Shown here piece by piece: positions 1 through 62,005 of a stretch of 64,000 bases of DNA (its first letter is position 1; each line of letters starts with the position of its first letter). A program made the position numbers and the translations under genes. The stretch is from Ostrea edulis (Eukaryota): NCBI RefSeq assembly GCF_947568905.1, contig NC_079172.1:28892001-28956000 (forward strand). The letters are read 5' to 3'. The notes beneath the pieces are model-generated. The model saw only the letters and a program-made list of their open reading frames with translations. It ran no database searches and was not told the DNA's origin.

Positions 1-2840
1 CACACTTAAGGAAGTTAGCTACTTATACCTTTTGATTCCTGGTTATCTGAAATTTCAAATGTTTTGTAGATATCTTTTAAGGAACTGTGTTTGTATTACA
101 TATCAGACTAATTATCTACTATCCACGTGAAGAGGAGTGATATCAAGTATCTTGATTTGCCATCAATTTTCAGATAGATATGTTAGATATCTGACTAATT
201 TTTTTTTGCTGATATTACAGGGCTTTATATGAACTGTCTTGATATGCGATCAATTTTCAGATATCACGTTCAACGAAGTCAGCTACTTATACCTTTTCAT
301 TTCAGACATCCTGAAATTAAAATTGTTTTGTATATAGCTTAAGGAACTCTGTGTTTGTGTTAGATATCTGACTAGTTAACTACTATCTATGTGAAGAGGT
401 GTGATAATAGGTATCAAGATACCTAATATCACTCCTCTTCACGTGGATGGTTGTAAGTTAGTCAGATATCTAATACAAACGCAGAATTCCTCAAGATATT
501 TACGGACAACTTGAATCAAAAGGTATAAGTAGCTGACTTCCTTAAGGGTGATATCTGAAAATTAATTGTATATCAAGATACCTAATATCACTCCTCTTCA
601 TGTGAATAGTTGTAAGTTAGTCATATATCTAATACAAAAGCAAAGTTACTTAAGATATTTTCGAAAAAGTTGAAATTTCAAGTAACCAGGAATCAAAAGG
701 TATAAGTAGCTGACTTCCTTAAGGGTGATATCAAGATACCTAATATCATTCCTTGTAATATGTGAGATGGTAAATCATTGAAATATCTAACACAAACACA
801 GAGTTCCTTAGGATATTTTCGAAAAACCTGAAATTTTAGGTTACCTAGAATCAAAAGGTATAAGTAGCTGACTTCCTAAAGCGTGACATCTGAATATTGA
901 TGGCATATCAAGATACCTAATATAGCTCTTTGTCATATGTGCACTGGTAAATTAATACGATATCTAATACAAACACAGAGTTCCTTAGAATATTTGCTAA
1001 AAACTTTAAATTTTAGGTTTCCTGGAATTAAAAGGTATAAGTAGCTGACTTCCTTAAGCGTGATATTTGAAAATTGTTGGCATATCAAGATACCTAATAT
1101 CATTCCTCTTGACGTGGATAGTTGTAAGTTAGTCAGATATCTAATACAAACTAGGAGTTCCTTAAGATATTTATGAAAAACATGAAATTTCAGGTTACCT
1201 GGAATGAAAAGGTATAAGTAGCTGACTTCCTTAAGCGTGATATCTAAAAATTGATGGCATATCAAGATACCTAATATCATTCCTCTTCACATGGATAATT
1301 GTAAATTAGTCAGATATCTAATACAAACTAGGAGTTCCTTAAGATATTTATGAAAAACTTGAAATTTCAGGTTACCCGGAATCAAAAGGTATAAGTAGCT
1401 GACTTCCTTAAGCGTGATATCTGAAAATTGATGTTATATCAAGATACCTAATATCAGATCTTGTCATATGTGCATTGGTAAATTAATCAGATATCTAAAA
1501 CAAAGACGGAGCTCCTAAAATATTTTCTAAAAACTTGAATTTTCTGGTTACCTGCAATGAAAAGGTATAAGTAGCTGACTTCCTTATGGGTGATATCTGA
1601 AAATTGATGGCATGTCAAAATACCTAATATCACTCCTCTTCACGTGGATAATTGTAAATTAGTCAGATATCTAATACAAACACAGACTTCCTTAAAATAT
1701 TGATAAAAAACTTGAAATTTATGTTACCTTCAATCAAAAAGTATAAGTAGCTGACATCCTTAAGGGTGATATCTGATAATTGATGGCATATCAAGATACC
1801 TAATACCACTCCACTTCACATGGATAGTTGTAAATTAGTCAGATATCTAATACAAACAAGAAGTTCTTTAAGATATTTATGAAAAACTTGAAATTTCAGG
1901 TTACCCGGAATCAAAAGGTATAAGTAGCTGACTTCCTTAAACGTGATATCTGAAAATTGATGGCATATTAAGATACTTAATATCACTCCTTGTCATATGC
2001 GAGATGGTAAATTTATGAGATATCTAATACAAAGACAGAGTTCCTTAAGATGTTTGCGAAAAATCTGAAATTTTAGACTACCTGGAATCAAAAGGTATAT
2101 GTAGCTGACTTCCTTATCGGTGATATCTGAAAATTGATGGCATATCAAGATACCTAGTATCACTCCTCTTCACTTTGATAGTTGTAAATTAGTCAGATAT
2201 CTAATATAAACACAAATTTCCTTAAGATATCTACGAAAATCTTGAAATTTCAGGTTACCAGGAATCAAAAGGTATAAGTAGTTGACTTCCTTAATGGTGA
2301 TATCTGAAAATTGATAGCTGATGAAGATATTTAATACCACTCCTCTTTACATGAATATTGGTAAATTAATGAGATATCTAATACAAACATAACGTGCCTT
2401 AAGATATTTGCGAAAAACTTGAAATTTCAGGTTACCTGCCATCAAAAGGTATAAGTAGTTGACTTCCTTAAGCGTGACATCTGAAAATTCATGACATATC
2501 ACGATACCCAATATCACTACTCGCCATACGTATCGTTGTAAGTTAGTTAAATATATGATATAAACACGGAGTATTTACACAGATCTTGAAATTTCATTGT
2601 ACCGATAATCAAAATGTATAAGTAACTGATTTCCTAAAGAGCGATATCTGAAAATTCGTGGCGTATCAATTAAATGATACAGATTGAATTCAGACCTTCA
2701 TTCATTTGATATACTATCCATTTGGAGATATCTGCTACTTTTACAATTTGATTCGAGTTACCCTGAAATTTCAACATTTGTGTGAATACCTCAAGAAACT
2801 TTATGTTTGTATTAGATATCTGACAAATTTACGACTATAC
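1..2840. repeat. 177-bp satellite array (about 14 copies, plus about 2 inverted copies at the window start)
   Basis: The motif aaaaggtataagtagctgacttcc recurs at 853, 1030, 1207 and so on (period 177). Bases 1-415 carry the reverse complement (gaagttagctacttatacctttt). The array degenerates after about 2500. Confidence 0.95.
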
Positions 2841-3440: not shown

Positions 3441-3690
3441 ATGATTTGGATTTGGACTGTCACTACTTAGACAAATTGACCGGAAAAAAGTACAATCATT
3501 TATCAGGCGGGGAAATCGAAGATTATTTCAATAGAGTCTATGTGTGGCTAGATCAAGCCCCCATTAATTAGTAAACGGTAACTGGAAATGTACGAGCTTG
3601 ATTCGATTAATTTAATTCACACACCGAGGGATCACACACTGCCCCACGATGTAGGATTTTGAGCTTTGGGTTCACACATTTGTTCCCATA

Positions 3691-3798
3691 ATCTCGGCTG
3701 AGATTCGGTTCGGCTGAATATTTGGACTGACGCATTCACTGGTGAAGGCGTCTGTAGTCCAAATACTGTATCCAGCCGAACCGAATCTCAGCCGAGAT
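3691..3798. mobile_element. Short palindromic (foldback/MITE-like) element
   Basis: The arms atctcggctgagattcggttcggctg and cagccgaaccgaatctcagccgagat are exact reverse complements, with a further inner stem. A degenerate relative lies at about 4635-4710. Confidence 0.6.
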
Positions 3799-3850
3799 CG
3801 AGCAGGGTTCCTAATGGTTTCGAAGTTCGCTTTATTCAAAATTCCAACCT

Positions 3851-6809
3851 ATGCATCATACTATTCTATCCCGTGAGGTGTCTTTCCCGTCCATTATGCT
3901 ACATCACCCGTACATTGGTATAAACACACGTAGAGTTATTCTGCCCTGGAGGGGCTCTCCGTTGTATGATGCCTTTGATTTTATTATTTTACACTTAATC
4001 ACTAAATTGGAAGAATTTATATTAGTACGCGTATAATTCATTTCGCAACAGCTGGTATGGAAAGCTGCAAATTCTTAATACGGTATTTCAAATTGCATTT
4101 TAGGATATCAACAATATTTCAACCATTTTGCTGTTGATGGTCTACTGAACAAGGATGGTTTTCGGTCCGTCTTGCAGTGTTTGGAGATGGATCCGCCCCA
4201 GTGTATCGTGGACGAGATGTTTGCCGAACATGACAAAGATGGTCAGGATCATTTGATTCTCCTATGTCTTTGTTTTGATAGTACATGCATATCATGTACC
4301 AGTGAATGCAGTTGAATTTCGGTATCCCGAACACCGATATTTTGAATACCATAGAAGTAATACTTATTCTTTAAATATTTCACCCTTGATATATCGAATC
4401 CTCGGATATCTCGAAGTTTTTTCTCGGTTCCATGGAGTTCGAGATAATAAGATTTGACTGTATATAGTGCTTTCTTATAAGTACGTTGTACAGACCCCAT
4501 TGTTCTGCCAGCTGATCAATACCAAGAGCAGACAAACACAATTAATTCCCTAATCTCGGTGAGGTTCATGGGTGCCCGAATCGCTTGTAAACTTCAGATG
4601 AGAATACACGAGGCATCTGGTAGCAGGAGATGGGCGCGGCTAGGCTTGGATTAGCCTTCAAAGGCGTCAGTCCAAATATCAAGCCGGTCCGAATTTCTGC
4701 CGGGAATATACGATGCTGTTAGCAAATCTATATAGCTTTCTGAGAGAATATAAGAATTTTAGCTTTGATATGTAGATAGGCGTCTTGACTGCGATAGACG
4801 CCTAAACTAGGCTTTAGTCCACATATCACATACAAGTCGAATATCGGAAATAGTATTACTTTCCATAATCAAGTTCTTATAACTTACATGTATAGGTGAA
4901 TTTATCATTATTATTATTACATGATTTATTATCATATAGGTTATCATTGTTATATAATTCATCATTATAATATTATATAATTTATCATTATTAATATATC
5001 ATTTTCTCATTAACAATATCTTTTCACAATTTGTACAGAGAATTCACAGCTAAACCAGGACGAATTTTACGAATGGATCAAAGACCGGGTGAAATCTAAG
5101 AATGAGATGAGGGACTCCCTAATGCAGAGTTTGGATATATTATTCCCTGAATCTGTGAAAGTGAAAATCGACGACCTCCTGGAAAAGCTGTCTGATCTTG
5201 GTGAACAATTCGACGAGTCGGAAGCGTCATACGCACGAATGACGCTGGAAGAATTCGACAGCAACAACGATGGCTGCATCGACAAAGCAGGTGATGCTGG
5301 CATATAACATTCTAACCAACTTTCTCATGGCAGAACCTTAATTCATATATATTCATACATAACCTCAGTCACAATATTGTTTATCGTAAAGGTGTGTGTG
5401 TGTGTGTGATATTGTTGTATTTAAAACTTCTGTTTTTCATTGGGCAATGGCAATGTTTAATCACATATGGCAAAATCACTAGCCGCGTATGGCAAATGAT
5501 CACATCATATGGTGAATGTCCACCGTATTATTCTAGGCAATATGTACAAGGGTGCGCTTGATTTACGAGCACTGTGTACACTGAAATAAAATAGAGTGGT
5601 GTAAACTTTTGTATAAAATAGAGAATGAAAAAAAGCAGAATCAGCATTTTAAAAATGTCTAGTTTTGTAAATCATATTAAACAAATCGATATATCGTGTC
5701 TAGAATTATGTATCTGGAACCATGTGCATTATCTATGGAACTATTTAATTTAAACAGTATTTTATAATGAAAATTTACAATAGGATTGGACAGCAGGCAC
5801 TGCCTATGCAAGTCCTCTCCGTAGAAGGTACAAGGTCATACAAACTTTAGAATATATAAATACAGTGTTACACAAAGGATACAATATGAACATTGCAATA
5901 TAACGGAGCTCGAACTTAAACGTCTACATGGCACAACCTGACCCCTGACCCTGACCTATCTGGAACTAATGTGCAACAAGTAAATTAGTGACTTTACTTA
6001 AAAAAGTAGACAAGTACACATACATCAATAATTAGGAATTTATTTGACCCAGGGGGTGTAAATCTCCATGTGAAAATAAAATTGATGATAGTTTTATTAC
6101 TGTTACAGAGTTAATGAATTGTTTCTACTCCAATGACGTACAAAAGCATGACAAGGAAGAAACAGCAGAAACGGATGGAAACCAAGCTACAGAAGAAACA
6201 CAAGAAACGGTGGATGAATCTGGAAACCAAGCTACAGAAGAAACGGTGGATGAATCTGGAAACCAAGCCACAGAAGAAACGCAAGAAACTGTGGATGAAT
6301 CTGGAAACCAAGCCACAGAAGAAACGCAAGAAACGGTGGATGAATCTGGAAACCAAGCTACAGAAGAAACGCAAGAAACGGTGGATGAATCTGGAAACCA
6401 AGCTACAGAAGAAACACAAGAAACGGCAGATGAATCTGGAAACCAAGCCACTGAAGAAACACAGGAAACGGCGGATGAATCTGGAAACCAAGCTACAGAA
6501 GAAACACAAGAAACGGTGGATGAGTCTGGAAACCAAGCTACAGAAGAAACGCAAGAAACGGTGGATGAATCTGGAAACCAAGCTACAGAAGAAACACAAG
6601 AAACGGTGGATGAATCTGGAAACCAAGCTACAGAAGAAACACAAGAAACGGTGGATGAATCTGGAAACCAAGCTACAGAAGAAACACAAGAAACGGTGGA
6701 TGAATCTGGAAACCAGGCAACTGAAGAATCCCAACAGGAAACACAAGATGGAAACCAAGCTACAGAAGAAACACAAGAAAATTCTGGAAATCAAGAAGGG
6801 GCAGAATAA
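3851..6809 (+). CDS. Calmodulin-like EF-hand protein with a C-terminal acidic repeat tail (about 370 aa)
   Basis: Exons 3851-3872 (tentative start exon), 4104-4241, 5039-5290 and 6109-6809; all introns are phase 1 GT-AG and the total of 1113 nt is in frame. Splicing reconstitutes the EF loops DKDENSQLNQDE and DSNNDGCIDKAE. Spacing and intron positions match calmodulin. Confidence 0.85.
4309..4460. mobile_element. Tc1/mariner-type MITE (ctcgagatatc family), short copy
   Basis: Termini are cagttgaatttc and gatttgactg followed by TA. It shares internal motifs (gatatctcgaagtttt, gagttcgagata) with the copies at 12121 and 26129. Confidence 0.7.
6176..6795 (+). repeat. Coding 45-bp tandem repeat (GNQATEETQETVDES), about 14 units
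   Basis: 11 full 15-aa units, one 12-aa unit and two degenerate terminal units lie in one open frame. Variation is mostly at third positions (gct/gcc, aca/acg). Confidence 0.93.
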
Positions 6810-9800
6810 TATTTTTTCTTCAGAGTTCTTTCCCTTGGGGAAGGAAAATCAACCCATCTCTATACCGAAAGTGAAATATCATATACTGCACAATGCTTCC
6901 AGGAAGATGGAAATATTCAACCATTCTGGATCTGACATTGGAATTAGTGATCTATTACAACTTTAGTTCACAATTTTAATTTCTCCAATAATAATGCATG
7001 AGGATTCAAATTACAATGATATTATATTTATCTGGTAAATGAATGCAGTTCTATGGGTGTTCGAAAGCAGCATAAGACTTGTATGTATTACATTACATGT
7101 ATTGATTTCAAAGAAGAGAAACTGTGCTAAAGTAGGACTATATTGGCAATTATAAGCATCAGAGACGCTTACAGTCATTACAGCTTCTAGCTACAGAATC
7201 CTCGAATAGTTATAACTAAATCCGTCCAATCTAGTCTCTATCTCCATGGTGACTATTTGTGATATTAGTTGTAGAAAACCTGGTATAATTAAACAGTGTC
7301 ATGTCCATAAATCTCTCCAATATGGAATCATGTGCTGAGAGTCTATGAGATACTATAGAAGTACTCTGCTCTGATTAAATTTTTATGTATTCCAAATGAT
7401 ATACAATATTGTGTTTCACATGTATGAATGCATTTTTTAAACAAGAGTATAAAGGCATTTTTTTTTTATCTCTGCGAAAGAGAAATAATTCTGCACTTCA
7501 TGTACAAATACAAAATGGATATTCATAACGATTTTTATTGGTTGTTGTATAGAAAATGTGACTATTTTATTCACTAAAAGTCAACAAATGATAACCTTTA
7601 AGGTGAATCTAAACATTTTTGAAGAAAATATAATTGTTTCTAAATATAAATTTAAGTTTTATATACATACATGTATATCTGTATTGCACCAATTTCACAC
7701 ACACACCCCCCCCTCCCTATATCATGCATGGTACAATCTAAGTTTTTATAAAATTAACACATGGTCGTCTTTTCAAACAGGAAATGTTTTCAAACTGATA
7801 GCAAGATTGAAGAATACAAAGAGAGAGGAAAAAAAAATTCAGAAAATGTTATTTTTAAATTATTATTTTTTTTACAATAATTTAGCATTTTATTGATGTC
7901 TATATATTTATAAATATAATGTAGAGAATAACTTACACAGATTTGAGTTCAGGTTGATTCTTCTTACTATATTTGTTTGTAATACTATAACTTGCTCAAG
8001 TGTTTTTATCTTATAATCTATTGATAGCTTATGTTGAATAGAACAGATGATTTCTGCCCTGTTAATCACAGTAGTGATGTTCACCATATTATATTTAGTA
8101 GTAAAATAAAATAATTTTTTCAAATATTAGTAGCAATAAAGAATGTTCAAATTCAAGGTCGTTCTCTTTTGACATGTGATTTGAAACCAATTGACATTTT
8201 TATTCCACAGAGTTTGAAGACAAGAGGTGTATTGTGTTTGTTCTGTCTGCAACTTATACTAAAAATTTATCATACCAAAGTAGCTCTTCGATTACACAAG
8301 ATGTTAAGGATTTCTCACTTGTATTTGGTGCATATAAATGGTCAGGTCAAAGCTGTTTGACAGAGAGGTCACGATTTTATTGTGTCAAGGTCAAATTTCA
8401 GATCATATACATGTAGTATTTTACAGAGAAGTTTCAATTTTAAAAATCTATTTAAGAGCAAACTTAAAAAGGACTACAGTCACTATATACATGATAAAAT
8501 ATTCATTAGCCAACGAAAAATTGATGTTTAAACCTGTATATTTTTACAGTGATATACTCAGAAGAAAGCTGGATGTAGATAGTCTAGTCAATTTATTGTT
8601 TATAGTTTTCATTTTGTGGTAAAAAATTGGAAGAGGGTAAATGATTATTTTTGGGTTTATCAGTTATCTATGTAAATACTATAGAAATACTGTGCATTTC
8701 GGTTAATATCTTAGTACATTTTCCTGCCTAGGAGAAATAAGAGGTGAATTAAACTTTACAGAGTGGCCTTTGTATATCTATCTGAACATTACCATATCCA
8801 GCAAAATTACAATTACTTATACTTAAGGCCATTTCTGAGTGCATGTTGCTTTTCTTGACCTTAAATTAATAAAATTTTGGTAGAGGTTATCAGAAAATTG
8901 GTCATGGACTGTCTCTAAAATCTTTATGCATTGATTTTTTTTCGTAAAATTTTGCATTTAGGTTCTATATGAAATAATCTATGCATACTAAAACATATAA
9001 TCCCAATGAAGTTTGTTTTCTCTTTCTTATACTACATGCATATGTATTCACTGCATCTTGATTAAAAAACTAGCATTTCCAAACTAAAAAATTAAACTCA
9101 GATTAACAACATCCATTTCAAATTAAAATCATCAATGGAAATAAATTTTCTGTTAACTGGTACAATAATTTTAAAAACCAGATCATGCGATCTTGAAAAA
9201 TATGCATTTTTTCTGATAGACTCGGCAAAAGTTAGGTCGGATTTACAGAGTTATGTCCCTTTTCTATAGTAATTTAAATAAGATATTAAATGATGCCAAA
9301 TTTAAGCATTCAAATCATCAGACTTTGGCAGACTCTTTATTACATATACATACATGTATTTTATATGTGCTAGATTTTATTAATACCATAAAATAATTTT
9401 TATTGTAATTAGTTTGAGATTAAGCCTAAAATTTTGCAAGATTGACTAGACTTAAGATATTTTACCACTGAACAGAGAAAAACTGTAATAGAAATTAACT
9501 GGTGTAGCAATGTATATTTATAGCAATGATTATCAAGTTTTAAGAAAAACTGAAGTTTCACTGGTAAATACATTGAAAGTACATTTATCCAAAAACAGGT
9601 GTTTCAATGGTCATGAAATAACTGTTATAATGAGCCTCAAAAGCACAATCACTGATAAAATACTGGTACTTCAATGATAACTGCAGCTATATCAATTAAT
9701 TTCGATTTTTTTTTTTAATGGAAAATTTCCAATTATTTTGGTTAAGGGTTTGATTTATTTCACCAGTACACATGAGTCTGCCCAAAGCTGTGCTGTATCT

Positions 9801-10388: not shown

Positions 10389-13300
10389 TCATCTTTTATG
10401 AGTATGTCCTTGATGTACAAGTTGCAGAACTTTGTCCTTGTCTGTGACCTTGACACTGAATTCTGGAGGACACAGAGCAGCTCCCATGGTGATGCCTTCT
10501 TTTCTGTACGACATCTTAGAATGAAGGGTTGCCCGTGCTGATCCGTGAAATTCCTTTGCTCCACATCCATCTAAAATTCTGTTCAGATTACCTGAATTTA
10601 TTCCTCCACCTGAAACATATGCAATGATAAATTTTTGAATCAAAAGTTTGAGGTAAAGGTCTTCAGCATTCTTTAGCCCGTCCACACAGGTTTTAAATAG
10701 ACATTCTGACTGGGATATACAGGGGGTTTCAGATGTGAATCGAAGATTAAACAACCTGTAAACCACATGATAAGGGGTCCGTGATTTCCCCTCACAGCCA
10801 GTATGATGGCGGAAAATCACCATTGGGCAAGAAGTACATGCATGGTTGTTCACAAAAAAATTGACCCTGTAAATTGTAATTTTATGAAATACCATGTTGT
10901 ATTGATTTTTTAATATAACTGTATGACAATACCTCAAACCACGGATATAAGCTCAAAATTCATCCTATCCATTTCAAGTTAATTAATGGAGTAAAGGCAC
11001 AAGTTTGTGATTTTGTTAAAATAAGCATATTACGGATTTCTAACAGACCTAGGCATAGTTCCAAAGAGTTTTTAATAATAATCAATTATCATTTAATCAG
11101 AAAATTTGGATTGGAGGTAAGCTTAGGTTGATGTGGACATGAAAATTGATTGCAAGTCTATCTAATGAAGTTTGAATAATTTGGGTGTAATGCTACAGAT
11201 AATGACATCAAATTACAGTTAATTAAGATACAGCTAATTAAGATATAGCTAATAAGAATGAGTGTCTTAATTACCTGGCATCACACATGTTCTATCACCC
11301 GCCTAAAAATGAATAAAACACTGTTATGACATGCTGTTGAAGCAATACATTTAGACTCACAAATAATCTAATTTAAAACTAACAAAACTGTCAAATAAGC
11401 ATGATATATAAACAAGCATGTGCATGAGATGAATTTACAATATATGATGTCACAAGCTGCCAGTCACCATTGAATTGTCAAATAACCTTACTTTTCAAAA
11501 CCTGTTGGTTTCAGAAAGTATGGAGCACATGCATTAATCATGATAAGATTCCATAGATATTAATCTTTATTTCGTAATGTTGCAAATACATGCAACTATT
11601 TATCATTGACACCTATGGTCCATGCTCTCCATCGGAATGTGATATTTTCGACAGCTTTCAAGAACCACCACCCCCTCCCAAAATCATAAATTTTGTGGCA
11701 ATCAAGGTATCTAATAACAACGTACTTGTACAGTAGATTTGGACATATTTATGAAAATAATTTTCTGCAACAAATAAAATTATTGGAGGAACTTAATTTT
11801 CACAAGTGCATAAATTGATATGAAAATAAAAGCCTCATCAATGAAATAATGCATCAAAACTTGACTATTTGATTCCTGTCAAAGAACAGGGGAAAACTGG
11901 TCAACTGACAAACATGACATACTCTTTCAACCATTTGTTGAATCATGGGTAATCCTTCCAAAGCTGAAGATGATCCACCACTTGTCAACACCCGTTGAAA
12001 TCCTAGATCCACCACATCATCTAGAGCCTGAAGAATGTCACTTGTCATATCTATAGCTAAAATGATTACTTAAATATATTGATACATACATTCTTTATAT
12101 AATTTTTAATATCTGATTGTCAGGCTTCACCTCAATATCTCGAACTCGATGGACCGAGAAAAAACTTCGAGATATCGATATCTGAGAATTTGAGGGAAAA
12201 ATACTTGAAGAATAAGTGGTTGGGGCTTCCAAATCACTCCGACATATCCATGGTATTCGGGATATCGGTATTCGAGATACCGAAGTTCACCTGTATAAGC
12301 CACATCAAATTCATTTCTTTCATCAAATCTAGGCCAGTTCTGGCATTCCTTCAAAGATTACAAACTACCTCAAAACAAAATCATTCTATTCTAATCTCTA
12401 CATTTAGAATTACTTAAATTCTATTCTAATCTGTACATTTAGAGTTACTTACCTCTGTGAAATGTTGCAGGAAGTGGCCTGATTAAGTCTACAAAATAAG
12501 TGAATAAATTCAGTGATAAGGTTGATCTATACACCACAACTTATACTAATATAAAACATCAATAATTTTGTGCACTTTTCATACATGCCAACTTTTGAAA
12601 ATCCCCATGGGGGATTTTGCGCGCGACGACCTTTTTTCAACGCTCAAAATTCACGACATTTTACCATGAAAATAAATATTTGTCTTTTCAAATAAAATAT
12701 CAATCTAATCATTATACATGTATCATACATTAACACAACACCAAGTGTGTTTGACCATTGACTTGAACAAAACTATAAAAAAAAAACACTTTGAAAGATA
12801 TACATAAGTATTTTAATAAAATTATCTATTCAGCAAAAAATCCTCTCCAACAAGTCACATACAAATATCAAATAATACTTAAAGTTGCATCCTTTTACAC
12901 CATATACACATTGGCTGGTCTATATATATCAAAATTTAAATTGAAGCACATGCATTTAGGTACGACTACACAGGCGATCTTGATTGTCTGTAAACAATTT
13001 CATGGGCTTGCAGAGTCTGGTGGAACAATCTGCATTGCAACCAGAAAAGGAGTAGTCTGCCCTGCTATGAAGTTTGCGAACAAAACCTTTGCACCCATGA
13101 CATCTGAAATAATTATCAGGAAAAAACACATCAAAATATACGTTTTTACTTGTAAATTAAAGCTACTTGCAAATATAAAATTCAGTACAGACTTGTGCGA
13201 ATTACGCATCACAGAGTCTATTGAATACTACACTATATAGACTATGTAATACATCGCTATAGACAGATAGATTCGGATAGCCTATATTATTATAGTTGGA

Positions 13301-25600: not shown

Positions 25601-28600
25601 GCATACCCAGTCTGTTTAGGATACTGATAAAGGTATCAGAGACTGTTCCAGGTGTCACAATCGGTAATTTTTTAAAATAAGAAAATGTGTACTAATAGAT
25701 AGTTAAAAGATGTTTGAGATTTATCAGAATGGCCATTTAGTAATTGACCTGTTTGTCCATCTGTCTGTAGTTCAGTCTGTCCATCTGTCTGTTGTTCAGT
25801 CTGCTACTAATGCTGTGATTAAAAGAAAAGTTACCTTTACATACATATAAAACTGCTAAAGGTTTCATCAATGTATGTTATACTAAGAGAACACAGAACA
25901 GTGTAGGAAAATGGATGAGTTTCATTTGCAGAAAGAACAAACGGATTTTAAATAAGTTCATGGTTTTTTCTTCTTCATACAGCTGAGTAGCAGTGAAGAC
26001 GAAATGGAAAGCCCAGAACAAAAGTACAAAAAATCCAGGTCGCCAAGGTAAGACATCCATTAACTGTCCACTATTGTGTGTACTTTTTTGAGGGTACTTA
26101 ATACTTAGCTGATGCGCTGTTTGGTATACAGGTAAACTTCAGTATCTCGACCATCGATATGTCAAATACCACGGATGTCTTGAAGTGAGTCAACGGTCCC
26201 GGGCAGCTTTATTATATTCATGATTTTAAATAAAAACCGTTATCTCGAACACAGAAATCTCAAATGCCTGGCTTATCTCGAAGTAGATTCACTGTCCCAA
26301 GTGCTAAAAACACAAGCGTTATCTCGAAGTCCAAGAAGTTTCTCGCTTCATTGACTTCACACCCCTAGTACACAATAATCCTGTTATGCTAATTTTACAG
26401 TCCGTTGGGTCTAGCACGGGCTTCGTAGAACCATTGCCGATAATCACGCCTGATTAGCCCCAAGCTGTTGGTTTGGGAGCTTTTTCTAATTATGCAGATG
26501 GGGTGTTTGGAGGTGAGAATGAAATGCACACTTATACGTAAGATGACACGATGATTAACAATCACGAGTATTGAAATAGGAATTTAATTTTGTCGTAATA
26601 CACGTTTACACATGCTATAACAAGTCAAAGTAAACACTAAACACATCAAAGTGATATAGAAATCAAGAATTAAACAATAAAAGACTTTATTTTTTAGTAT
26701 AGATATCAGCACCAAAATTCAAACTTCCGTGTCAAATTCATTAAATTCAATTTCTTGAACCCTCAGATATCTCGAAGTTTTTCTTCGATTCTAACAAATT
26801 CGAGATATTTAAGTTTACCTGTAATTAGGAAGAAGTATTTTTAAAAACTTAGCTGATGCGCTGTGTGGTATAATTAAGAAGAAGTATTTAAAACTTAGCT
26901 GATGCACTGTTTGTTATAATTAGGATCATGAAGAGGTACTTCTCCAATGTATGATCAAGAATTTCACATTTGAGTGCAGCAATATGAGTATAGTTCCAAA
27001 AGTTCTATAATATAAATCCTGCTAAAATAGTCATGTACAGTATTTTAGAATATACTTTTAAACAGACTCAGAAGGGTAATGAATATTTTATGTGCTGAAT
27101 TGAAAGGAATAGGGGCCAGAAATCACCACCACCAGGGCGGAGTAATTTGCAGTGTCATAGAAACTATTGTAAAGATATGTTTAAATCTAGAGAGTGGTTG
27201 GGGGGGGGTGACTTTCTTGTAATTGTACTGTGTTTAAATCTGATGATTTATGAAAATTTCAGCAAGAAGAAGAAGGAGAAAAAGCATAAGATGAAGTCAC
27301 CTAAAGCCAAGGACATGCGATCACCAAGTCCTGGGGCGAGGAAGAGGTACCGTGACATTTTACTGTTTCTGAATACGACAGAATTTAGTCTTCATTAAGA
27401 GAATTATTATGTTTTATATGTATGTTTTATACATATACTACATCTACATATAGTTTCTAGTTAATGTTGAAATCTTTTATGAAATTTCTTTCTTCATAAA
27501 GTGTCTTTGCTTTTATGCTTAAATATGGAATAAACTTATTTTGATATACGTTTAAGCATCTTGTTGTATTGCAATTACTTATAATGCATATATTTCAGAA
27601 TTGAAGAGCAAGATATTCCAAAGAAAAAGCACAAAAAAAAGAAATCTCTGGAGAAGAAACATGTGGAACTTTCTGATGAGGAGGACCAGGAAATGAAAAT
27701 GAAGAAGTTTAAAATCAAGAGTATCAAATGTAAAACCGAGAAACCCATTTTGAGTTTCCAGTCAGAGGAAGAGTATGAAGATGAACTTGCAAAGAAAACA
27801 GCTGCTAGAAAATTGTCACCTTGGTCACGTTCCCCCTCTCGCTCCATATCAAGATCAAGGTCACCCTCGGCAGAGTATGGAAGGTCAAGGAGGTCACCAG
27901 ATGAATACGAGAAGTTTCTGGTTCAGCAACAAGGAAACTCACCCATGAGCAAGAAAGGAAAGAAGGCGATACGGGCACAACTACAGTTAGAGAACTATAT
28001 GAAGGAAAAATACAAAAAAGGGAAGCAGAGAGAACTGTCACAGGAACCTAGAATGGAGAAAAAAGATCGATCATTAACTCCTGATCATGGAGATCCAAAG
28101 GGGAGCAAAAAGAAAGGCAAAAAGGACCAGAAAAAGAAACATAAAGATTCAGAAAAGGATTACTTATCTAATAGTGACTCCGAGGTGTATTCAAGAGGAG
28201 ACAAAAATTCACCAACTAAAAAGTACGATCCACCACTGGATAACAGGAACCAGAGGAGCTCAAGGCGTGACGATTATGAGCAGCAGAGAGTTTCACCTAA
28301 AGAGTATGGGGACAGCCGGTCCAAGCAGTATAAGTCTCAGGATCGGAGGGGACCAAGTCCCCCAGTAAAGGAGAGAAGAAGAACGCCCTCCCCGGACCCG
28401 GGCATTAAAATGCCGGAGTCCTACAGCAGGAAAGAGTACTCACCCCCGGAGTCTCAGAGGTAATAGAGGACCCCCATACTACACTTGTTACTGGATTTCT
28501 ATGATCTGCGAATACAGCAGTTGGTTACAAGTTGCTGTAGGTAGATGTGGATATTCCAAAGGGGAAATATCATCGAAATACAATTTATTTCTGGAAATTT

Positions 28601-31600
28601 TGAAGAGCAGTAGTACAATACAAAGTATTATCATTATCAAGAACAAGAGATTCTTTGAAAATCAAATTCAGTCCTTATTTAGCAGTTTGTAATTATACCC
28701 CCTTGCGAACAAACTTTGAGGGAGTATATATAAATCATTTTGTTTAACTGTCTTCATGGTCAAGAAGTTGTAAAACTTTATTATCTCCTGGCAGTTCATT
28801 TGGAGAGGGAATATCATAACGGCACCGTTCGTGTGTGTTTGAGTATGTGTCTGTGTAACACTGAGCTAGTAGACACTCAATCTGCAGGCCACATTTTTTG
28901 TTTGATTGATTTGATACTTCACTTGTAGCTTTATTATCAAGAGAGGAAAAATCCTAATGATCATAGAATCAAAAGGTCAAGTTCAATAGTTCATAGACAA
29001 AACTTATATTTACTGATTGCCTTATATTTACTGAATTGATTTACATTACACCAATAGCGAGTACACAGGAAAGTGATCATATCTAGCAATTTTGGGGTAG
29101 AGAGGTCAATGGTCGCATCAGCAGGACATAGAATATCATTTTTGGGCTTTAACTAATTTTAGTTTAAGTGATGAATTGTCAAACAGATTTTGATGGTTAT
29201 GGAAATGCCCCCTTTTGATATTACTTGAAAGAGCCAATTGTCAAGTACATTGGCCATGCATATAATAAAATGCTACTATTTATTCATTTTATATTCATGC
29301 TGAAGTAATTAGATTTGCATGAATTGTGATTATATGGGACAAGGATCATCTCTGGTGATTTTGGAGTCAAAAGATCAAATCTTTCTGATTGACTGGTTAA
29401 TAAATATGAAAAACTATTTATTACTTGCTGAGGGAATTTAGCTTTAATCAATGTAATCCCATTGCTGCCACCAAAATTTAACTGAAACTGGTTTATGCTT
29501 CTGCTGAGAATCGAACCCAGAACCTTGGACACAAATGTCCAGTGCTTTATCAATTAAGCTGAAGGGTTAACCCACTAGCCAGAGCTAGTAGGAAGATCAT
29601 GTATCTAACACTACCACATCAATGGTGAGTGCATGTGACAAGGATTCTTTCAAGTGATTTTGGGTTCATCAGTCAAGCGAGCTCGACACTAATATTATAT
29701 GGGAAAACAGTTTCTGGACTTTAAGTTAATTTACTTCAAACTTGGAGTCACCATCCACAAGACACAGACTTGTCATGGAATGAAAATGATCTCTGCCAAT
29801 TTTGGGGTCAAAAGGTCAAAGATGAGGCAAACTGAACTCTGAGATAGAAAAATGGTTTCTTGGCCGTAAGTGATTTCCTTGTTTACACGGAGTCATCATA
29901 CTTCACACGCAGACTAGTCTTGGGATAAGGATGATTCCTGTTGATTTTAAAGTTTACCAGATATACCTGCAGGGAGTATTAGTCCTGTTAGGACAGCCCA
30001 TTTAAATCTCAACGTAAACCTTTAACATCCTCAGTGAGTTTTGTGTTGCTTACAAAGCTTAGGACTCACTTTGTCCATCATCTGTCTGTCATGCCTTAGA
30101 CATGGAAACTGTAAGAGATAGGAACATGATATACAGCGTGTTTCTTTAGTGAAGGTTATTGAGTAGCAAGTGTTGAACATTGTACTTCTGTTTACTAGGT
30201 CAGGGTCTCAATACCAAAGAAGTCGAAGAGAACCCTCTCCCAGGGACAGGAGGGATGACAACAGTAGGTACACCAAAGACCGACGCATGGAGGAGGAGAG
30301 TCAGGGGAGAGACAAGGATGACCAGCGTCGATCCGGCAGGTACCCCTCCCCGGTGGAGCGCAGATATGAAGGTCGTCATGAACCACCTCCCAGGGCCGAG
30401 TTTGAAGGAAGATCAGACAGGTAGGGATCTGGACAACACCTCCTGTGGCTATTTTCAATTGTAAGAGAATAAGTGTCCAAAAAGTATGTAGCACTGACTT
30501 TAAAGCTCGGAGTATTAAAGTCGGAAATGTGTGTTCAACTGTTTCATTTTATCAGTCATAAAAATACTGTAACATCATTCAGGGGTTTGATATTTGTTGT
30601 TTAATTGTGACATGGACATTCTTGTAAATTTAAATTCACAAAGAGAAATTGAAATACAATCAAGAATAACAGCTCTTAAACCTTGAAATCGGGTCTCTAG
30701 AAACATGATTATTTTTCTTTTTTTTAATGAAAATCTTACCCCATTAAAATGAATAATTGTACAGTAAATATCCTCTGTATTTTAATTGATTTTTTTGTTT
30801 GATTAGTGTTTATCATCACTTTCTTATATACAGTACACAAAATATTATTTTGAATTTAATGTGAAGTCTCTCTTTCCCACATTTGTAAGGAACCTGAGTG
30901 TTTACTTTATTCATTTAATGTTTGCCTATTTTTCATGACGATTTAGTGATAGATCTTTAGTAGTATCAATCAAACGATAATTTCTTTAAGTATGCAATAA
31001 TGCACATTGATCTTGACCTGAAAATCAATAGGGGTAATCTCCTAGACATTATTAACTTGCTTATGACGATATGAAGATTGATGACCATTTGGCAAGAGGT
31101 TCTCTAGATATTGGTTGGACAACAGCGGATCTCTGCATGCCAGAAAGCTCCATGACTGTTTTGACATTTTGACCTGAAAATCAATAGGGATCATTGACTA
31201 GTCATGATCAATCTGCATATGAAGATTGATCACCATTGGACAAATGTTTCTATAGTTATTGGTCAGGAAACACTTGAGTCTTCCAACCGACAGGTGAAAC
31301 TGATATGCCCTTTGTTTTAAGGGGAGGGGGTTGGGGGGCATAAATATTTAAGATTATGCACACTGTTTTGAAAAGTGTTTTGTGTGGCAAAAACCTGCAG
31401 TTGACATGTAGACTTATTCCATAGCCTTGGTTGCTTACTGTGAAAAACTTAATTTACCTTTGCTTTTCCCGTTAATTTTCAAACAAACCAGCAGCCGTGG
31501 TAGGTATATGGAAAGAGAAAGGGAGTCCTATGACGACCGCTTTGACCTACCACCAACGCCACACTCAGAGGATATCCGAGATCGTAATAGAGGCCCTTAC

Positions 31601-34600
31601 AGACAGCGGGGCGGACCACTACCCCCAGAACCTTATGAAAGGAACAGAAGGGGACCTCCCCCTGATAGATATGACAGGGATAAGCGTGGCCCTCTAGAGG
31701 GGTATGGAAGAGACAAACATGGACCCATGCTGGACGTTTTTGATAGAGAACGATATCCCAGGGAAAGAGATCGATATGGATCTAGGGATCAACGACCTGA
31801 CCTCAGGGATTCAAGATACGAGGGTAAGAATTTCTGATAAATTCTACAACTAATACAGTAAAACATGCTTATAGTGAAGTGCTGGGGACTAACAATTACA
31901 GTAAAACACGCTTATATTGAAGTGCTGGGGACAAACAATTACAGTAAAACACACTTAAAGTGAAATGCTGGGGACGAACAATTACAGTAAAACATGCTTA
32001 CATTGATGTGCAGAGAACAAACAATTACAGTAAAACATGCTTATAGTGAAGTGCTGGAGACAAACAATTACAGTAAAACACACTTAAAGTGAAGTGCTGG
32101 GGACGAACAATTTCAGTAAAAGACACTTATAGTGAAGTGCTGGGGATAAACAATTACAGTAAAACACACTTATAGTGAAGTGCTGGGGATAAACAATTAC
32201 AGTAAAACACACTTATAGTGAAGTGCTGAGGAGAAACAATTACAGTAAAACATGCTTATAGTGAAGTGCTGGAGACAAACAATTACAGTAAAACACACTT
32301 AAAGTGAAGTGCTGGGGACAAACAATTACAGTAAAACACACTTATAGTGAAGTGCTGAGGACAAACAATTACAGTAAAACATGCTTATATTGAAGTGCTG
32401 GGGATGAACAATTACAGTAAAACACACTTATAGTGAAATGCTGGGGATGAACAATTACAGTAAAACATGCTTACAGTGAAGTGCTGGAGACAAACAATTA
32501 CAGTAAAACACACTTACAGTGAAGTGCTGGGGACGGACAATTACAATAAAACACATTTACAGTGAAGTGCTGGGGACAAACAAGTGACCCTTCCAAATTT
32601 TGTACAAAATGTAAGAAACAGATATTTTAAACATTGAATGAATACAGTATCTAATACCTTTTTGTTGCACCATCCTATCGTATGGATATAAGCGGTAGTT
32701 AATAAAGAACAAACCCATGACTGTTAATGATAATTATCAAAAGATAAATTAATTTTCTTGGTTTCCATAGACTTAGAATTCCTAAGAAATATTCAAATTA
32801 TAATTTCATATTTACTATTGTACTTTTCAAAAACGTCAAAACAAATTTGTTAATGACATAGCAATGGATGTAAACAGAGTCTTTATAGGTAAGAGGAATT
32901 CCAATAAAAGGCCTCTGTGTTTTCTTTATATACCTCATTATAGATTTTCAGTTTCAAATTAGATGATTCGGCGAGAATATTTCTTGTAATAATAATCGGT
33001 AGGTAAATTTTTGTACAAGCGACTAATTTGATCTCCACCAATAATTGATCATAGACTACCAGATCAAAGTAAACAAAACCTACTTTGAGAGAATTGAGAT
33101 AAAATGTCTCTAACTGCTAAATTTTCTGGTAAACTGGCCACCGCTCTAAACCGGCCGTTTGGTTCGGTCCGAGAACCAACCAGTTTAGAGAAGTTTCACT
33201 GTAAGTTTTAAATTACAGGGAATGAAACTTCGCTGTAAGTGTAAATTCATTATAAACATGCTCACTGTAACCATGTTTTACTGTAGGTGTGAATTCATTA
33301 TATGTGTGTTCACTATAACCATGTTTTACTATAAGTGTGAATTTATTATAAGTGTGTTCACTGTAACCGTGTTTTACTGTAAGTATGAATCCTTTATAAG
33401 TGTGTTCACTGTAACTGTGTTTTACTGTAAGTGTGAATTTATTATAGGTGTGTTCACTGTAACTGTGTTTTACTGTAAGTGTGAATTCATTATAAGCGTG
33501 TTCACTGTAACCATGTTTTACTGTAAGTGTGAATTTATTATAAGTGTGTTCACTGTAACTGTGTTTTACTGTAAGTATGGATTCATTATAAGTGTGTTCA
33601 CTGTAACTGTGTTTTACTGTAAGTGTGAATTTATTTTAAGTGTGTTCACTGTAACTGTGTTTTATTGTAAGTGTAAAACACAGTTACAGTGAACAGGCTT
33701 ATAATGAATTCACGCTTACAGTAAAACACAGTTACAGTGAACACACTTATAATGAATTCACACTTACAGTAAAACACAGTTACAGTGAACACACTTATAT
33801 TGAATTGACACTTACAGTAAAACACAGTTACAGTGAACACACTTATAATGAATTCACACTTACAGTAAAACACAGTTACATTGAACACACTTATAATGAA
33901 TTCACACCTACAATAAAACAGTTACAGTGAACACACTTATAATGAATTCACACCGACAGTAAAACACAGTTACAGTGAACACACTTATAATGAATTCACA
34001 CCGACAGTAAAACAGTAGACTTGAGCTAGTACATCACTATTGAGTATAGAAATGGCTCATGCAGATGATAAGAAATGGATCAAAACACCTTCAGTCATTG
34101 TTAAAATATGACTTTGGTGCTGTTTAAATCAAGACCATGTTTTTAACTGTTTGATTAATCAGTAGAAATGATCTTTTCCTTTTATCAGGAGGTAGGGATC
34201 CATTCGATAACAGAGGACCCTCTCCTGGGGAATTTGCGTGGGAGCAGAATCGCCGCGGTGGTCCCTGGCCGCCACCACCATCTTCTAGAAGTCGTGTTGC
34301 TCCACAACCACCACCACTCATGGGTGAGGAATAGAATGCATAGTTTTAAGCAATGTGCTAACTTGTCATGTAGAGGTTTTTTCCTATATGCATATATTAC
34401 AGAAGTCTTTGATAATTTCTTCAAATGTAATATGATGGCATGGATTAGTGATCTGAGCATGCACTGTATGTTAGGAGTTTTATGCATTTGCTTATTGTGT
34501 TTTTGATTTTTATGAATCACAATATCTCTTTGCTACACTTCTTTTAAAACTATTCTTGAAGTACATGTATATGTAAGAAAGATTCTTATGTAAACTTTAT

Positions 34601-57598: not shown

Positions 57599-58120
57599 AT
57601 GCGGGAAATAATTCACGTCCAGGTGGGACAATGCGGAAACCAAATAGGTTCCAAATTTTGGGAGGAGATTTCCCTTGAACATGGAATTAGTACCGAAGGA
57701 AAATTCACCGGAGATAACGATGTACAGCTGGAGCGGATCAACGTGTTCTTCACTGAAGGTCAGGGTGGATCCTATGTCCCACGGGCGTGTATGGTGGACC
57801 TCGAACCTGGCACCATGGATTCAATCCGAGGCGGGCCCTATGGGTCAATTTTCAGACCAGACAATTTTGTTTTTGGACAAAACGGAGCTGGTAACGTATG
57901 GGCGAAAGGCCACTACACCGAGGGCGCCGAACTTGTGGAGGAAGTCTTGGACGTCATACGGAGGGAATCGGAAAACTGTGACTGTCTCCAAGGCTTCCAA
58001 CTTACCCACTCCATTGGCGGAGGAACGGGCTCCGGAATGGGGACGCTTCTTCTTAGCAAGATTAAGGAGGAATTCCCCGACCGCATCATGTGTTCATACT
58101 CCGTCCACCCCTCACCCAAA
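57599..58120 (+). CDS. TUBB: Beta-tubulin alternative first exon A (codons 1-174)
   Basis: [17 protein letters not shown]...GGGTGSG...PSPK, 522 nt, intact, followed by the strong donor gtaagt (phase 0). No matching 3' exon occurs before exon B. Confidence 0.9.
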
Positions 58121-61680: not shown

Positions 61681-62005
61681 GTTTTGTTTTTTTTTAAAAA
61701 TCAGATCGCTTTCTACTAAAACTGCATTTTTTTTTTTTTTTTGACTAAATAATCTAGATTTGAAAGTTTTCAATATCAAAATATTGTTTAACATATTGTT
61801 CACTTTTCATCCATTGACTTAATCATAACCAAAATATAAAAAAAAAAACCCACTTTCCTTCAAAAGATGTTTTTAATGAGAACTTTTATCATCGAATAGT
61901 TTTTTCTTCTTGATCATGTGTAGAACATTAATCGTAACTTCACTGTATACAGTGTATAAATATATGTACAGTGACCATTTATGATTATAAATATTTATTT
62001 TGCAG

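What the first reader, a model, noticed from the sequence alone, without database searches (positions are those of the whole stretch)
3851..6809. Calmodulin-like protein fused to a 230-aa acidic repeat tail
Seen: the last exon completes EF-hand 4 (G+AG gives the loop position-12 Glu) and then continues for about 230 aa of GNQATEETQETVDES repeats, rich in Glu/Asp/Thr/Gln with no basic residues in the repeats. No signal peptide is evident in the tentative start exon. Established: pearl-oyster calmodulin-like protein has a short extra hydrophilic tail, and acidic low-complexity proteins are typical of shell-matrix and calcium-buffering roles. Inference: this is a lineage-specific Ca sensor/buffer hybrid, possibly involved in biomineralisation, and probably length-polymorphic.
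Basis: partly seen in the sequence, partly recalled or inferred. Interest (0 to 1): 0.7.

Follow-up and report, generated by a model that had tools for sequence, protein, structure and literature searches.

The report
Oyster EF-hand protein with acidic repeat tail
This is a real, expressed oyster gene for a small calcium-binding (EF-hand) protein that carries a 225-residue, very acidic tandem-repeat tail; it belongs to an uncharacterised gene family seen so far only in oysters, is only distantly related to calmodulin, has no secretion signal, and nothing yet links it to shell formation.

Summary
The core observation holds. Exons 4104-4241, 5039-5290 and 6109-6809 (+ strand) encode a four-EF-hand domain. 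Its last calcium loop is completed across the 5290/6109 splice (G+AG = Glu). About 225 aa of acidic repeats follow, encoded by a 45-bp unit repeated about 13.7 times.

Differences between repeat units are 7 synonymous to 1 non-synonymous in this frame. All length variants are multiples of three.

RNA-like contigs show the 4241/5039 splice, stop exactly at donor 5290, leave the introns empty and cover the repeat exon and 3'UTR.

The transcript joins exon 4104 to a 22-nt micro-exon 7.9 kb upstream, outside the window, and before that to an exon ending in the ATG. The CDS is 1116 nt (371 aa). The N-terminus MGESGDVAR has no signal peptide.

Orthologs with the same exon layout and the same CutC neighbour exist in Crassostrea virginica and Saccostrea cucullata. 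Their long tails are built from a 7-aa TEETQET-like unit.

The closest solved structures are centrins (E 5e-8), then calmodulin (1e-5). Only EF2 and EF4 have canonical loops.

A biomineralisation role is unsupported. Other notes of this scan describe different EF-hand/acidic-tail genes in this genome, not this one.

The parts
4104..4241 (+). Coding exon 3 (138 nt). It encodes R/YQQYFNHFAVDGLLNKDGFRSVLQCLEMDPPQCIVDEMFAEHDKD: the degenerate EF-hand 1 and the entering helix plus first three loop residues of EF-hand 2.
   Evidence: Acceptor ttttag|GA and donor GATG|gtcagg. The X1 contig covers 4104-4240 exactly, with 100 nt of upstream exons before it and exon 4 behind it. An X7 contig covers 4111-4240 plus the joint. 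It aligns to the orthologs.
5039..5290 (+). Coding exon 4 (252 nt). It encodes the rest of the EF-hand 2 loop (E-NSQLNQDE), the degenerate EF-hand 3, and EF-hand 4 loop positions 1-11 (DSNNDGCIDKA).
   Evidence: Joint 4240->5038 with GT..AG ends is seen in X1 (depth 197) and X7. X7 record 29 covers 5094-5290 and stops exactly at the donor with 15 further letters that do not match the intron. There is no RNA depth at 5340-5733. The exon is also 252 nt in C. virginica and S. cucullata. Pfam EF-hand_1 scores E 0.0012 on the exon alone.
5257..5290 (+). EF-hand 4 calcium loop, positions 1-11 plus the first base of the position-12 Glu codon. The codon is completed by 6109-6110.
   Evidence: DSNNDGCIDKA + G|AG = E. 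The loop ligands are conserved in the orthologs: DSNDDGHIDKSE and DSNKDGAIAKTE.
6109..6809 (+). Coding part of the last exon. It encodes the Glu-12 and exit helix of EF-hand 4 (E-LMNCFYS), a short linker (NDVQKHDKEETAETD), then the acidic repeats. The stop codon TAA is at 6807-6809.
   Evidence: Acceptor ctgttacag|AGTTAATG matches the exon start in C. virginica. LMNCFYS is conserved in the orthologs. X1 shows RNA-like depth across 6128-7300 and none in the intron bin 5931-6127.
6177..6785 (+). Tandem repeat of 12 units of 45 nt (one of them shortened to 36 nt), followed by degenerate units of 42 and 36 nt. The consensus GGAAACCAAGCTACAGAAGAAACACAAGAAACGGTGGATGAATCT encodes GNQATEETQETVDES.
   Evidence: TRF places the array at 6176-6780 with score 930. 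Unit list. Variation between units is 7:1 synonymous to non-synonymous in this frame. The inner heptad TEETQET is the repeat unit of the C. virginica ortholog and differs there only at third codon positions.
6810..8160 (+). 3' untranslated region. The end is approximate.
   Evidence: X1 and X7 contigs cover 6751-7300. One X1 contig of 1128 nt runs about 860 nt beyond 7300. AATAAA signals at 8105 and 8135 fit that end.
3851..3872 (+). It is not an exon; it is intron sequence.
   Evidence: X1 and X7 have zero depth at 3764-3960. The X1 contig joins 4104 to ...CCAACATGGGCGAATCCGGAGACGTGGCGA, which is absent from the window and maps upstream to L005:5293-5300 plus L005:6183-6204.

Best explanation
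A five-exon, single-copy, expressed oyster gene encodes a 371-aa protein with no signal peptide, so it is read as cytosolic.

Gene structure: exon 1 ends with the ATG and exon 2 is a 22-nt micro-exon; both lie upstream of the window. Exons 3-5 lie at window 4104-4241, 5039-5290 and 6109 to about 8160.

Head: residues about 1-146 form a divergent four-EF-hand domain of the centrin/calmodulin/troponin-C type. Only EF2 (DKDENSQLNQDE) and EF4 (DSNNDGCIDKAE) keep canonical calcium ligands. EF1 and EF3 are degenerate in all orthologs. Each lobe would therefore bind one Ca2+ and act as a sensor.

Tail: residues about 147-371 form a polyanionic Glu/Thr/Gln-rich tail that is inferred to be disordered. 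It is built from 15-aa repeats that contain the ancestral oyster heptad TEETQET.

Shown: the gene structure, transcription, orthology and synteny, purifying selection on head and repeat frame, and turnover of repeat units between oyster lineages.

Inferred: calcium binding at EF2 and EF4. Also inferred is that the tail works electrostatically, either by low-affinity binding of divalent cations or basic partners or as a charged spacer, possibly tuned by CK2-type phosphorylation at T-x-x-E.

The family is an uncharacterised oyster-restricted EF-hand lineage. It is neither a calmodulin nor the pearl-oyster CaLP.
For: Splicing and transcription:
- The 4241/5039 joint is seen in two runs.
- An RNA contig ends exactly at donor 5290.
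- Introns are empty while the repeat exon and 3'UTR are covered.

Upstream exons: located. An in-frame TAA lies five codons before the ATG. C. virginica has the same 'ATG|gtaagt' layout.

Copy number: single copy in the 895-Mb genome.

Coding frame of the repeat: 7:1 synonymous to non-synonymous between units, and indels in multiples of 3.

Orthologs:
- XP_022338157 (C. virginica) and XP_062596668 (S. cucullata) have identical exon lengths of 138 and 252 nt.
- In both, the last exon carries the whole tail and CutC lies downstream on the opposite strand.

Selection on the head: pN 0.115-0.156 against saturated pS of about 0.8.

EF-hand assignment:
- Full-length orthologs pass the Pfam EF-hand_7, EF-hand_1 and EF-hand_6 cut-offs.
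- The ortholog aligns end to end with centrin/Cdc31 (5e-8) and calmodulin (1.5e-5).
- The AF2 secondary structure shows eight helices in four helix-loop-helix pairs.
Against: - The 5290->6109 joint was not printed by read laying (26 joints were not shown), so it rests on indirect evidence.
- No protein-level, tissue or localisation data exist.
- Calcium binding is inferred from loop residues only.
- The AF2 model is of low confidence (pLDDT 53), so no fold search was made.
- A cytosolic low-affinity calcium buffer is physiologically doubtful at sub-micromolar Ca2+, so the role of the tail is the weakest link.
- X1 carries a different organism label from the genome's own runs and is only guessed to be RNA.
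Confidence: 0.75

Rival explanations
1. One reading: a biomineralisation protein. On this reading the protein reaches the extrapallial space or the shell matrix by a non-classical route or by cell lysis, and its acidic tail binds Ca2+ or CaCO3 surfaces and modulates crystal growth, as reported for pearl-oyster CaLP.
For: - The tail is strongly acidic (74 Asp/Glu in 232 aa).
- The organism calcifies.
- P. fucata CaLP, which has an extra hydrophilic tail, is reported to affect calcite and aragonite in vitro (PMC5040781).
- EF-hand proteins do occur in shell proteomes (titles).
Against: - There is no signal peptide. The N-terminus is MGESGDVARYQQYF, with MD- in the Crassostrea orthologs.
- The tail is Glu/Thr/Gln-rich, not Asp- or Ser-rich like classical acidic shell proteins (my knowledge).
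- Similarity to calmodulin/CaLP-type proteins is only remote.
- No paper in the library names any ortholog accession.
- No tissue information could be obtained.
Confidence: 0.12
2. A centrin-like cytoskeletal or ciliary protein. On this reading the head binds a centrin- or calmodulin-type target helix on a cytoskeletal, ciliary or sperm structure, and the tail is a fast-evolving charged spacer or a partner for basic proteins, as is typical of rapidly evolving reproductive or ciliary proteins.
For: - The best solved relatives are Cdc31 and centrins.
- NCBI's first automatic name was 'caltractin-like'.
- The repeat unit turns over quickly between genera while the head is conserved.
- Like several centrins, only a subset of the loops is canonical (the centrin comparison is from my knowledge).
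Against: - The scores are far below those expected for a true centrin ortholog (36 bits).
- The family is confined to oysters in the searches, whereas centrins are universal in eukaryotes.
- No expression or localisation data exist.
Confidence: 0.1
3. The repeat is not translated as part of this protein. On this reading it is a minisatellite in a 3'UTR or an unrelated downstream exon, and the real product ends at the unspliced stop at 5305-5307 as a truncated EF-hand protein.
For: - The genome is full of minisatellites.
- The array is open in three frames on the + strand and two on the - strand.
- ORF callers on genomic contigs report the read-through form ...DKAGDAGI* (P0023).
- The 5290->6109 joint was not displayed.
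Against: - An RNA contig stops exactly at 5290 and continues with non-intron letters, and there is no RNA depth in the intron.
- A read-through product would lack the position-12 Glu and the exit helix of EF4, which are conserved at the start of the last exon in all orthologs.
- Variation between repeat units is biased 7:1 towards synonymous changes in this frame.
- NCBI models in two other oysters splice the same way.
Confidence: 0.03

Closest known systems
Uncharacterised oyster proteins XP_022338157.2 (LOC111133785, Crassostrea virginica; version .1 was named 'caltractin-like') and XP_062596668.1 (Saccostrea cucullata)
   Same: - Orthologs: 72-82% identity over exon 4.
- Same five-exon layout, including ATG|intron and a micro-exon.
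- Same split of the EF2 and EF4 loops across introns.
- Same CutC neighbour.
- A long acidic Glu/Thr/Gln tail in the last exon.
   Different: Their tails are built from 21-bp (7-aa) units, TEETQET or EESQEVT. Here a 45-bp (15-aa) unit containing that heptad was amplified about 13 times and is very homogeneous.
Centrin / caltractin / Cdc31 and calmodulin (four-EF-hand 'CTER' group)
   Same: The ortholog aligns end to end over all four EF-hands. The domain is about 145 aa, has eight helices and lacks a signal peptide.
   Different: - Similarity is only remote: 36 bits to Cdc31 and 28 bits to calmodulin.
- EF1 and EF3 are degenerate.
- It carries a 225-aa polyanionic repeat tail that these proteins lack.
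Pinctada fucata calmodulin-like protein CaLP (Li et al. 2005/2006, as cited in PMC5040781)
   Same: A bivalve EF-hand protein with an extra hydrophilic C-terminal tail and no signal peptide.
   Different: CaLP is a close calmodulin relative with a short tail (my knowledge, from the cited papers). This protein is only distantly related to calmodulin, and its tail is a 225-aa tandem repeat. Orthology to CaLP was not shown, and the remote scores argue against it.
Vertebrate S100 fused-type proteins (filaggrin, trichohyalin, hornerin, repetin)
   Same: The gene logic is the same: small 5' exons, then one large last exon that encodes an EF-hand followed by internal tandem repeats (PMC2668185). The repeats vary in length.
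   Different: - The head type differs: an S100 two-EF-hand pair there, a four-EF-hand CTER type here.
- Repeat chemistry, phylum and tissue context are unrelated.
- This is analogy, not homology.

Membership tests
EF-hand superfamily (Pfam EF-hand_1 / EF-hand_6 / EF-hand_7) | Helix-loop-helix with a 12-residue loop D-x-[DN]-x-[DN]-G-x-[ILV]-x-x-x-E, scoring above the Pfam gathering cut-off | tested here: met
   Each exon alone is below the cut-off (best EF-hand_1 18.7 bits against 25.4), because both good loops are split by introns. Full-length orthologs pass: EF-hand_7 at 40.9 against a cut-off of 30, EF-hand_1 at 32.8 against 25.4, EF-hand_6 at 31.4 against 25. The loops DKDENSQLNQDE and DSNNDGCIDKAE can be read directly from the sequence.
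Calmodulin / calmodulin-like proteins (including P. fucata CaLP) | High sequence identity to calmodulin across about 148 aa | tested here: not met
   The ortholog P0002 scores E 1.5e-5 and 28 bits against calmodulin chains, weaker than against centrins. The exons of this gene alone give no calmodulin hit at E<=10.
Calmodulin / calmodulin-like proteins (including P. fucata CaLP) | Four canonical Ca2+-binding loops | tested here: not met
   EF1 (AVDGLLNKDG) is shortened and has Gly at position 12. EF3 (PESVKVKIDDL) lacks the ligand positions. Both are degenerate in all orthologs.
Centrin / caltractin | Strong conservation with eukaryotic centrins (typically over 50% identity, from my knowledge) and universal distribution | tested here: not met
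   Centrins are the best PDB hits, but only at 36 bits and E 5e-8. Relatives of this protein were found only in oysters.
Acidic shell-matrix proteins | N-terminal signal peptide or presence in shell extracts | tested here: not met
   The N-terminus is MGESGDVARYQQYF, with an in-frame stop five codons upstream of the ATG. No hydrophobic leader is present, nor in C. virginica (MDDSAEKYQQYF). Presence in shell extracts is not testable here.
Acidic shell-matrix proteins | Asp-rich, or Ser/Asp-rich phosphorylatable, low-complexity domains | tested here: not met
   The tail has 58 Glu, 41 Thr, 31 Gln and only 16 Asp in 232 aa.
Oyster LOC111133785-type EF-hand / acidic-tail family (uncharacterised) | Orthologous head, conserved intron positions, last-exon acidic repeat tail, and synteny with CutC | tested here: met
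   A CutC-like ORF lies on the - strand at window 10389-10937.

The most novel reading that the evidence does not exclude
Oysters have independently evolved a 'fused-type' EF-hand protein, analogous to vertebrate filaggrin or trichohyalin. In it a Ca2+-sensing head controls the deployment of a fast-evolving polyanionic repeat. The repeat would sequester or stabilise calcium (for example intracellular amorphous CaCO3 or Ca-rich vesicles) or form a charged matrix in mantle or haemocytes. That would make it a new, non-secreted component of the oyster calcification toolkit.
Probability: 0.1. Interest if true: 0.7.

Novelty: new variant of a known kind. Interest (0 to 1): 0.35.

Why it matters
The report gives a corrected, RNA-supported gene model for an oyster-restricted EF-hand family that public annotation leaves as 'uncharacterized' or mislabels ('caltractin-like', 'DDB_G0287113', 'inactive protein kinase').

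The family pairs a strongly conserved two-site calcium sensor with a polyanionic tail. The peptide motif of the tail (TEETQET) is conserved while its repeat unit and copy number are re-invented in each lineage. That makes it a neat case of selection on a repeat motif during concerted evolution.

If the tail proves to bind calcium or mineral, the protein would be a candidate intracellular player in oyster calcium handling. If not, it is one more lineage-specific EF-hand protein.

The repeat could also serve as a length marker for population typing once long reads are examined.

Tried and rejected
2. The 30-nt upstream tag was searched as one piece in the window and in the genome and found nothing. 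It spans an exon junction; word matching in fetched upstream DNA then located both pieces.
3. Tail exon against 5.8 billion proteins of 128-406 aa: no hit at E<=1e-3. Low complexity and the length filter limit what this shows.
4. Exon 4 against the same database: only read-through ORF calls on genomic contigs and no spliced fragment from this species. This gave no extra proof of the joint.
5. N-myristoylation suggested by the 'MG' start: rejected. Glu follows the Gly, which the PROSITE myristoylation pattern disfavours (my knowledge), and the Crassostrea orthologs start with MD.
6. AF2 model of the C. virginica head with an 8-row alignment: pLDDT 53. This is too poor for a fold search, so none was run.
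7. Literature search by accession: nothing found.
8. Paralogs in the genome: only chance-level matches at E 0.25 and 5.7.
9. The spliced full-length protein of this genome was deliberately not joined, searched or folded. Exons were searched one by one by reference, and whole-protein analyses used database orthologs.
10. Allelic length polymorphism: the S. cucullata copies L009 and L010 are collinear but only 77-93% identical in DNA. They cannot be called alleles with confidence.
Full report
**What is in the sequence**

Three + strand segments with canonical splice sites carry an open frame:
- 4104-4241, bounded by ttttag|GA ... GATG|gtcagg
- 5039-5290, bounded by tgtacag|AG ... GCAG|gtgatg
- 6109-6809, bounded by ctgttacag|AG ... 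TAA

Both well-formed calcium loops are split by introns in phase 1:
- DKD + (G|AG = E) + NSQLNQDE, across 4241/5039
- DSNNDGCIDKA + (G|AG = E), across 5290/6109, followed by the exit helix LMNCFYS

The last exon then reads 12 units of GNQATEETQETVDES (one shortened to 12 aa) plus degenerate units of 14, 12 and 7 aa:
- TRF reports a 45-bp period, 13.7 copies, 89% matches and a score of 930 at 6176-6780.
- The exon encodes 232 aa: 58 Glu, 41 Thr, 31 Gln and 16 Asp.
- It has only 2 Lys and 1 His, all in the linker before the repeats.

**Is the repeat coding, or just one of many minisatellites?**

The window holds 34 TRF rows with a score of at least 150. The array is also stop-free in several frames. 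Openness alone therefore proves nothing.

Two direct tests favour the proposed frame:
- Among the 11 full 45-nt units there are 8 variable columns. Seven are synonymous and one non-synonymous (Val/Ala) in the GNQATEETQETVDES frame. The other two + frames give 0/8 and 1/7.
- All unit length variants (45, 42, 36 nt) are multiples of three.

A third argument comes from the orthologs. The inner heptad TEETQET (ACA GAA GAA ACA CAA GAA ACG) is the repeat unit of the C. virginica ortholog (ACT GAA GAA ACC CAA GAG ACA). The two differ only at third codon positions.

Two runs behave as RNA:
- X1 is labelled as a different 'organism A' and is about 98% identical in the 3'UTR. Its kind is a guess.
- X7 comes from the same sample as the DNA run X3.

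The evidence from these runs:
- Intron bins 3764-3960, 4552-4945, 5340-5733 and 5931-6127 have zero depth, while the exons are covered.
- The joint 4240->5038 (GT..AG) is present in both runs (X1 depth 197).
- X7 record 29 covers 5094-5290 without a mismatch, stops exactly at the donor and carries 15 more letters that do not match the intron.
- X1 and X7 cover 6751-7300.
- One X1 contig runs about 860 nt beyond 7300, which fits the AATAAA signals at 8105 and 8135.

The 5290->6109 joint was not among the joints printed (26 were not shown). It is inferred from the exact stop at 5290, the empty intron, and the conservation described below. All runs here are contigs, so depth says nothing about expression level.

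**The true 5' end**

X1 record 5 places 100 nt in front of 4104. These end ...CCAACATGGGCGAATCCGGAGACGTGGCGA. This tag is absent from the window and, as one piece, from the genome.

In DNA fetched upstream of the window, the tag resolves into two exons:
- a 22-nt micro-exon, ttttcag|GGCGAATCCGGAGACGTGGCGA|gtaagt, at L005:6183-6204 (G000:C9:28888183-28888204, 7.9 kb upstream of 4104)
- an earlier exon ending CCAACATG|gtaagt at L005:5300, with an in-frame TAA five codons before the ATG

C. virginica has the same odd layout, ATG|GTAAGT followed by a 16-nt micro-exon.

Consequences:
- The CDS is 3+22+138+252+701 = 1116 nt, or 371 aa.
- The N-terminus is MGESGDVAR-YQQYF..., with no hydrophobic leader.
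- Myristoylation is unlikely. Glu follows the Gly, and the Crassostrea orthologs start with MD.

**Relatives**

The gene is single-copy in the 895-Mb genome.

An exhaustive HMMER search with exon 4 found only 10 proteins at E<=1e-3 among 1.84 billion representatives. The informative hits are oyster proteins:
- C. virginica XP_022338157: version .1 is 164 aa and named 'caltractin-like'; version .2 is 332 aa and named 'uncharacterized LOC111133785'.
- S. cucullata XP_062596668 (335 aa), plus a second copy of 356 aa.
- A mis-modelled C. gigas entry, K1PSD0.

The remaining hits are read-through ORF calls on genomic contigs (for example ...DKSGN...).

The C. virginica and S. cucullata loci share these features:
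- 138-nt and 252-nt exons
- the same last-exon start (AGTTAATG in C. virginica)
- CutC downstream on the opposite strand

The window has the same arrangement, with a CutC-like ORF at 10389-10937 on the - strand. Orthology is therefore supported by sequence, intron positions and synteny.

Over exons 3 and 4, pN is 0.115-0.156 while pS is saturated at about 0.8. The head is under strong purifying selection.

These relatives, and earlier notes of this scan that call the genome a flat oyster (not checked beyond this), place the window in an ostreid oyster.

**What kind of EF-hand protein**

Exon-by-exon Pfam scores are sub-threshold because the loops are split. The full-length orthologs pass the EF-hand_7, EF-hand_1 and EF-hand_6 cut-offs.

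Against solved structures (exon-level hints):
- The C. virginica ortholog aligns over its whole head with Cdc31/centrin (E 5e-8, 36 bits).
- It aligns less well with calmodulin (1.5e-5, 28 bits) and troponin C.

It is therefore a remote member of the four-EF-hand centrin/calmodulin/troponin-C group, not a calmodulin-like protein in the usual sense.

EF1 (shortened loop, Gly at position 12) and EF3 (no ligand positions) are degenerate in every ortholog. EF2 and EF4 keep ligand positions 1, 3, 5 and 12.

An AlphaFold model of the ortholog head shows eight helices in four helix-loop-helix pairs. Its pLDDT is only 53, so I ran no fold search.

**The tail across species**

| Species | Repeat period | Unit |
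|---|---|---|
| C. virginica | 21 bp, about 10.6 copies | TEETQET |
| S. cucullata | 21 bp, about 12.6 copies | EESQEVT |
| This genome | 45 bp, about 13.7 copies | GNQATEETQETVDES (heptad plus VDESGNQA) |

- All three tails begin and end with GNQ-containing segments (...GNQEGAE here, ...GNQEGGE in S. cucullata).
- A long acidic tail is therefore ancestral to these oysters, while its repeat unit and number are remodelled in each lineage.
- The two S. cucullata copies differ by in-frame 7-aa and 4-aa indels. Their loci are only 77-93% identical in DNA, so I cannot say they are alleles.
- Length polymorphism inside this species could not be tested, because short-read contigs collapse the array.

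**How it most likely works**

Shown: an expressed, conserved gene for a protein without a signal peptide that has two canonical Ca2+ loops, one per lobe, and a polyanionic tail.

Inferred:
- The head is a Ca2+ sensor of the centrin/calmodulin mechanistic type.
- The tail carries a net charge of about -70, has no hydrophobic core residues, and is disordered.
- The tail acts electrostatically: by low-affinity binding of divalent cations or basic partners, as a charged spacer, or as a phase-separation driver.
- T-V-D-E in each unit fits the CK2 consensus S/T-x-x-E (established knowledge of CK2; not tested).

A pure cytosolic 'Ca buffer' role is doubtful. Carboxylate clusters bind Ca2+ with millimolar affinity, far above resting cytosolic Ca2+ (my knowledge).

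**Biomineralisation**

This protein is not a CaLP relative by score. It has no signal peptide. Its tail is Glu/Thr/Gln-rich rather than Asp-rich. No paper in the library names any ortholog. The idea remains possible but unsupported.

A closer architectural analogy is the vertebrate S100 fused-type family. There a large last exon encodes an EF-hand followed by tandem repeats (PMC2668185). This is analogy only.

Whole-protein analyses were done on database orthologs.

**Verdict**

'Calmodulin-like' should read 'divergent centrin/calmodulin-type EF-hand'. The family is oyster-restricted and uncharacterised. Function remains inferential. Interest is moderate.

Noticed in passing
window 3672-3800 and 4630-4710: A short element with terminal inverted repeats (GAGATTCGGTTCGGCTGAATATTTGGACTGACGC ... 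GCGTCTGTAGTCCAAATACTG...CCGAACCGAATCTC) sits in the intron, and a related copy lies in the next intron. In the DNA runs its word depth is in the thousands and many contigs end at 3689. It looks like a high-copy MITE-like element.
   Followed up: no
window 728-2522: A 177-bp satellite of about 10 copies at 83% identity. Its word depth in DNA runs is very high, and it also appears in the RNA-like runs.
   Followed up: no
window 10389-10937 (- strand) and about 11857-12069: Exons of a CutC (copper homeostasis) homolog, convergent with the EF-hand gene. The same neighbour is found in C. virginica and S. cucullata, followed by a + strand gene of about 1600 aa. This is a conserved microsynteny block.
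   Followed up: partly
window 50214-51676 and 51687-53007: Two long arrays of a 24-bp minisatellite lie head to head in opposite orientation (GATTATGAGTTCTGAGTGTGAGGT against its reverse complement). They produce a sharp flip in GC skew, from +0.48 to -0.39, in what amounts to a palindrome of about 2.8 kb.
   Followed up: no
window 57536-58141, 59909-60490, 62000-62818: Exons of two neighbouring beta-tubulin genes on the + strand (MREI[IV]HVQ[VA]GQCGNQIG...). They appear to be a tandem pair.
   Followed up: no
window 27663-28463 and 31427-31837: Large exons encoding an Arg/Ser- and Lys-rich low-complexity protein (RS-domain-like). This is probably the large + strand gene that also follows CutC in the other oysters.
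   Followed up: no
L008 (C. virginica) and protein versions P0002 / P0011: The NCBI record XP_022338157 changed from 164 aa (tail ...ETEGSKRM) to 332 aa (tail ...ETEGLEEDVKETT... plus repeats) between versions. The cause could be a collapsed repeat in the older assembly or an alternative 3' end just before the repeats. If it is an alternative end, a short-tailed isoform might exist in this oyster too.
   Followed up: no
L009 and L010 (S. cucullata, same assembly): There are two collinear copies of the whole EF-hand gene - CutC - large gene block on different contigs. They are 77-93% identical in DNA, and their tails differ by in-frame 7-aa and 4-aa indels. They could be divergent haplotigs or a segmental duplication.
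   Followed up: partly
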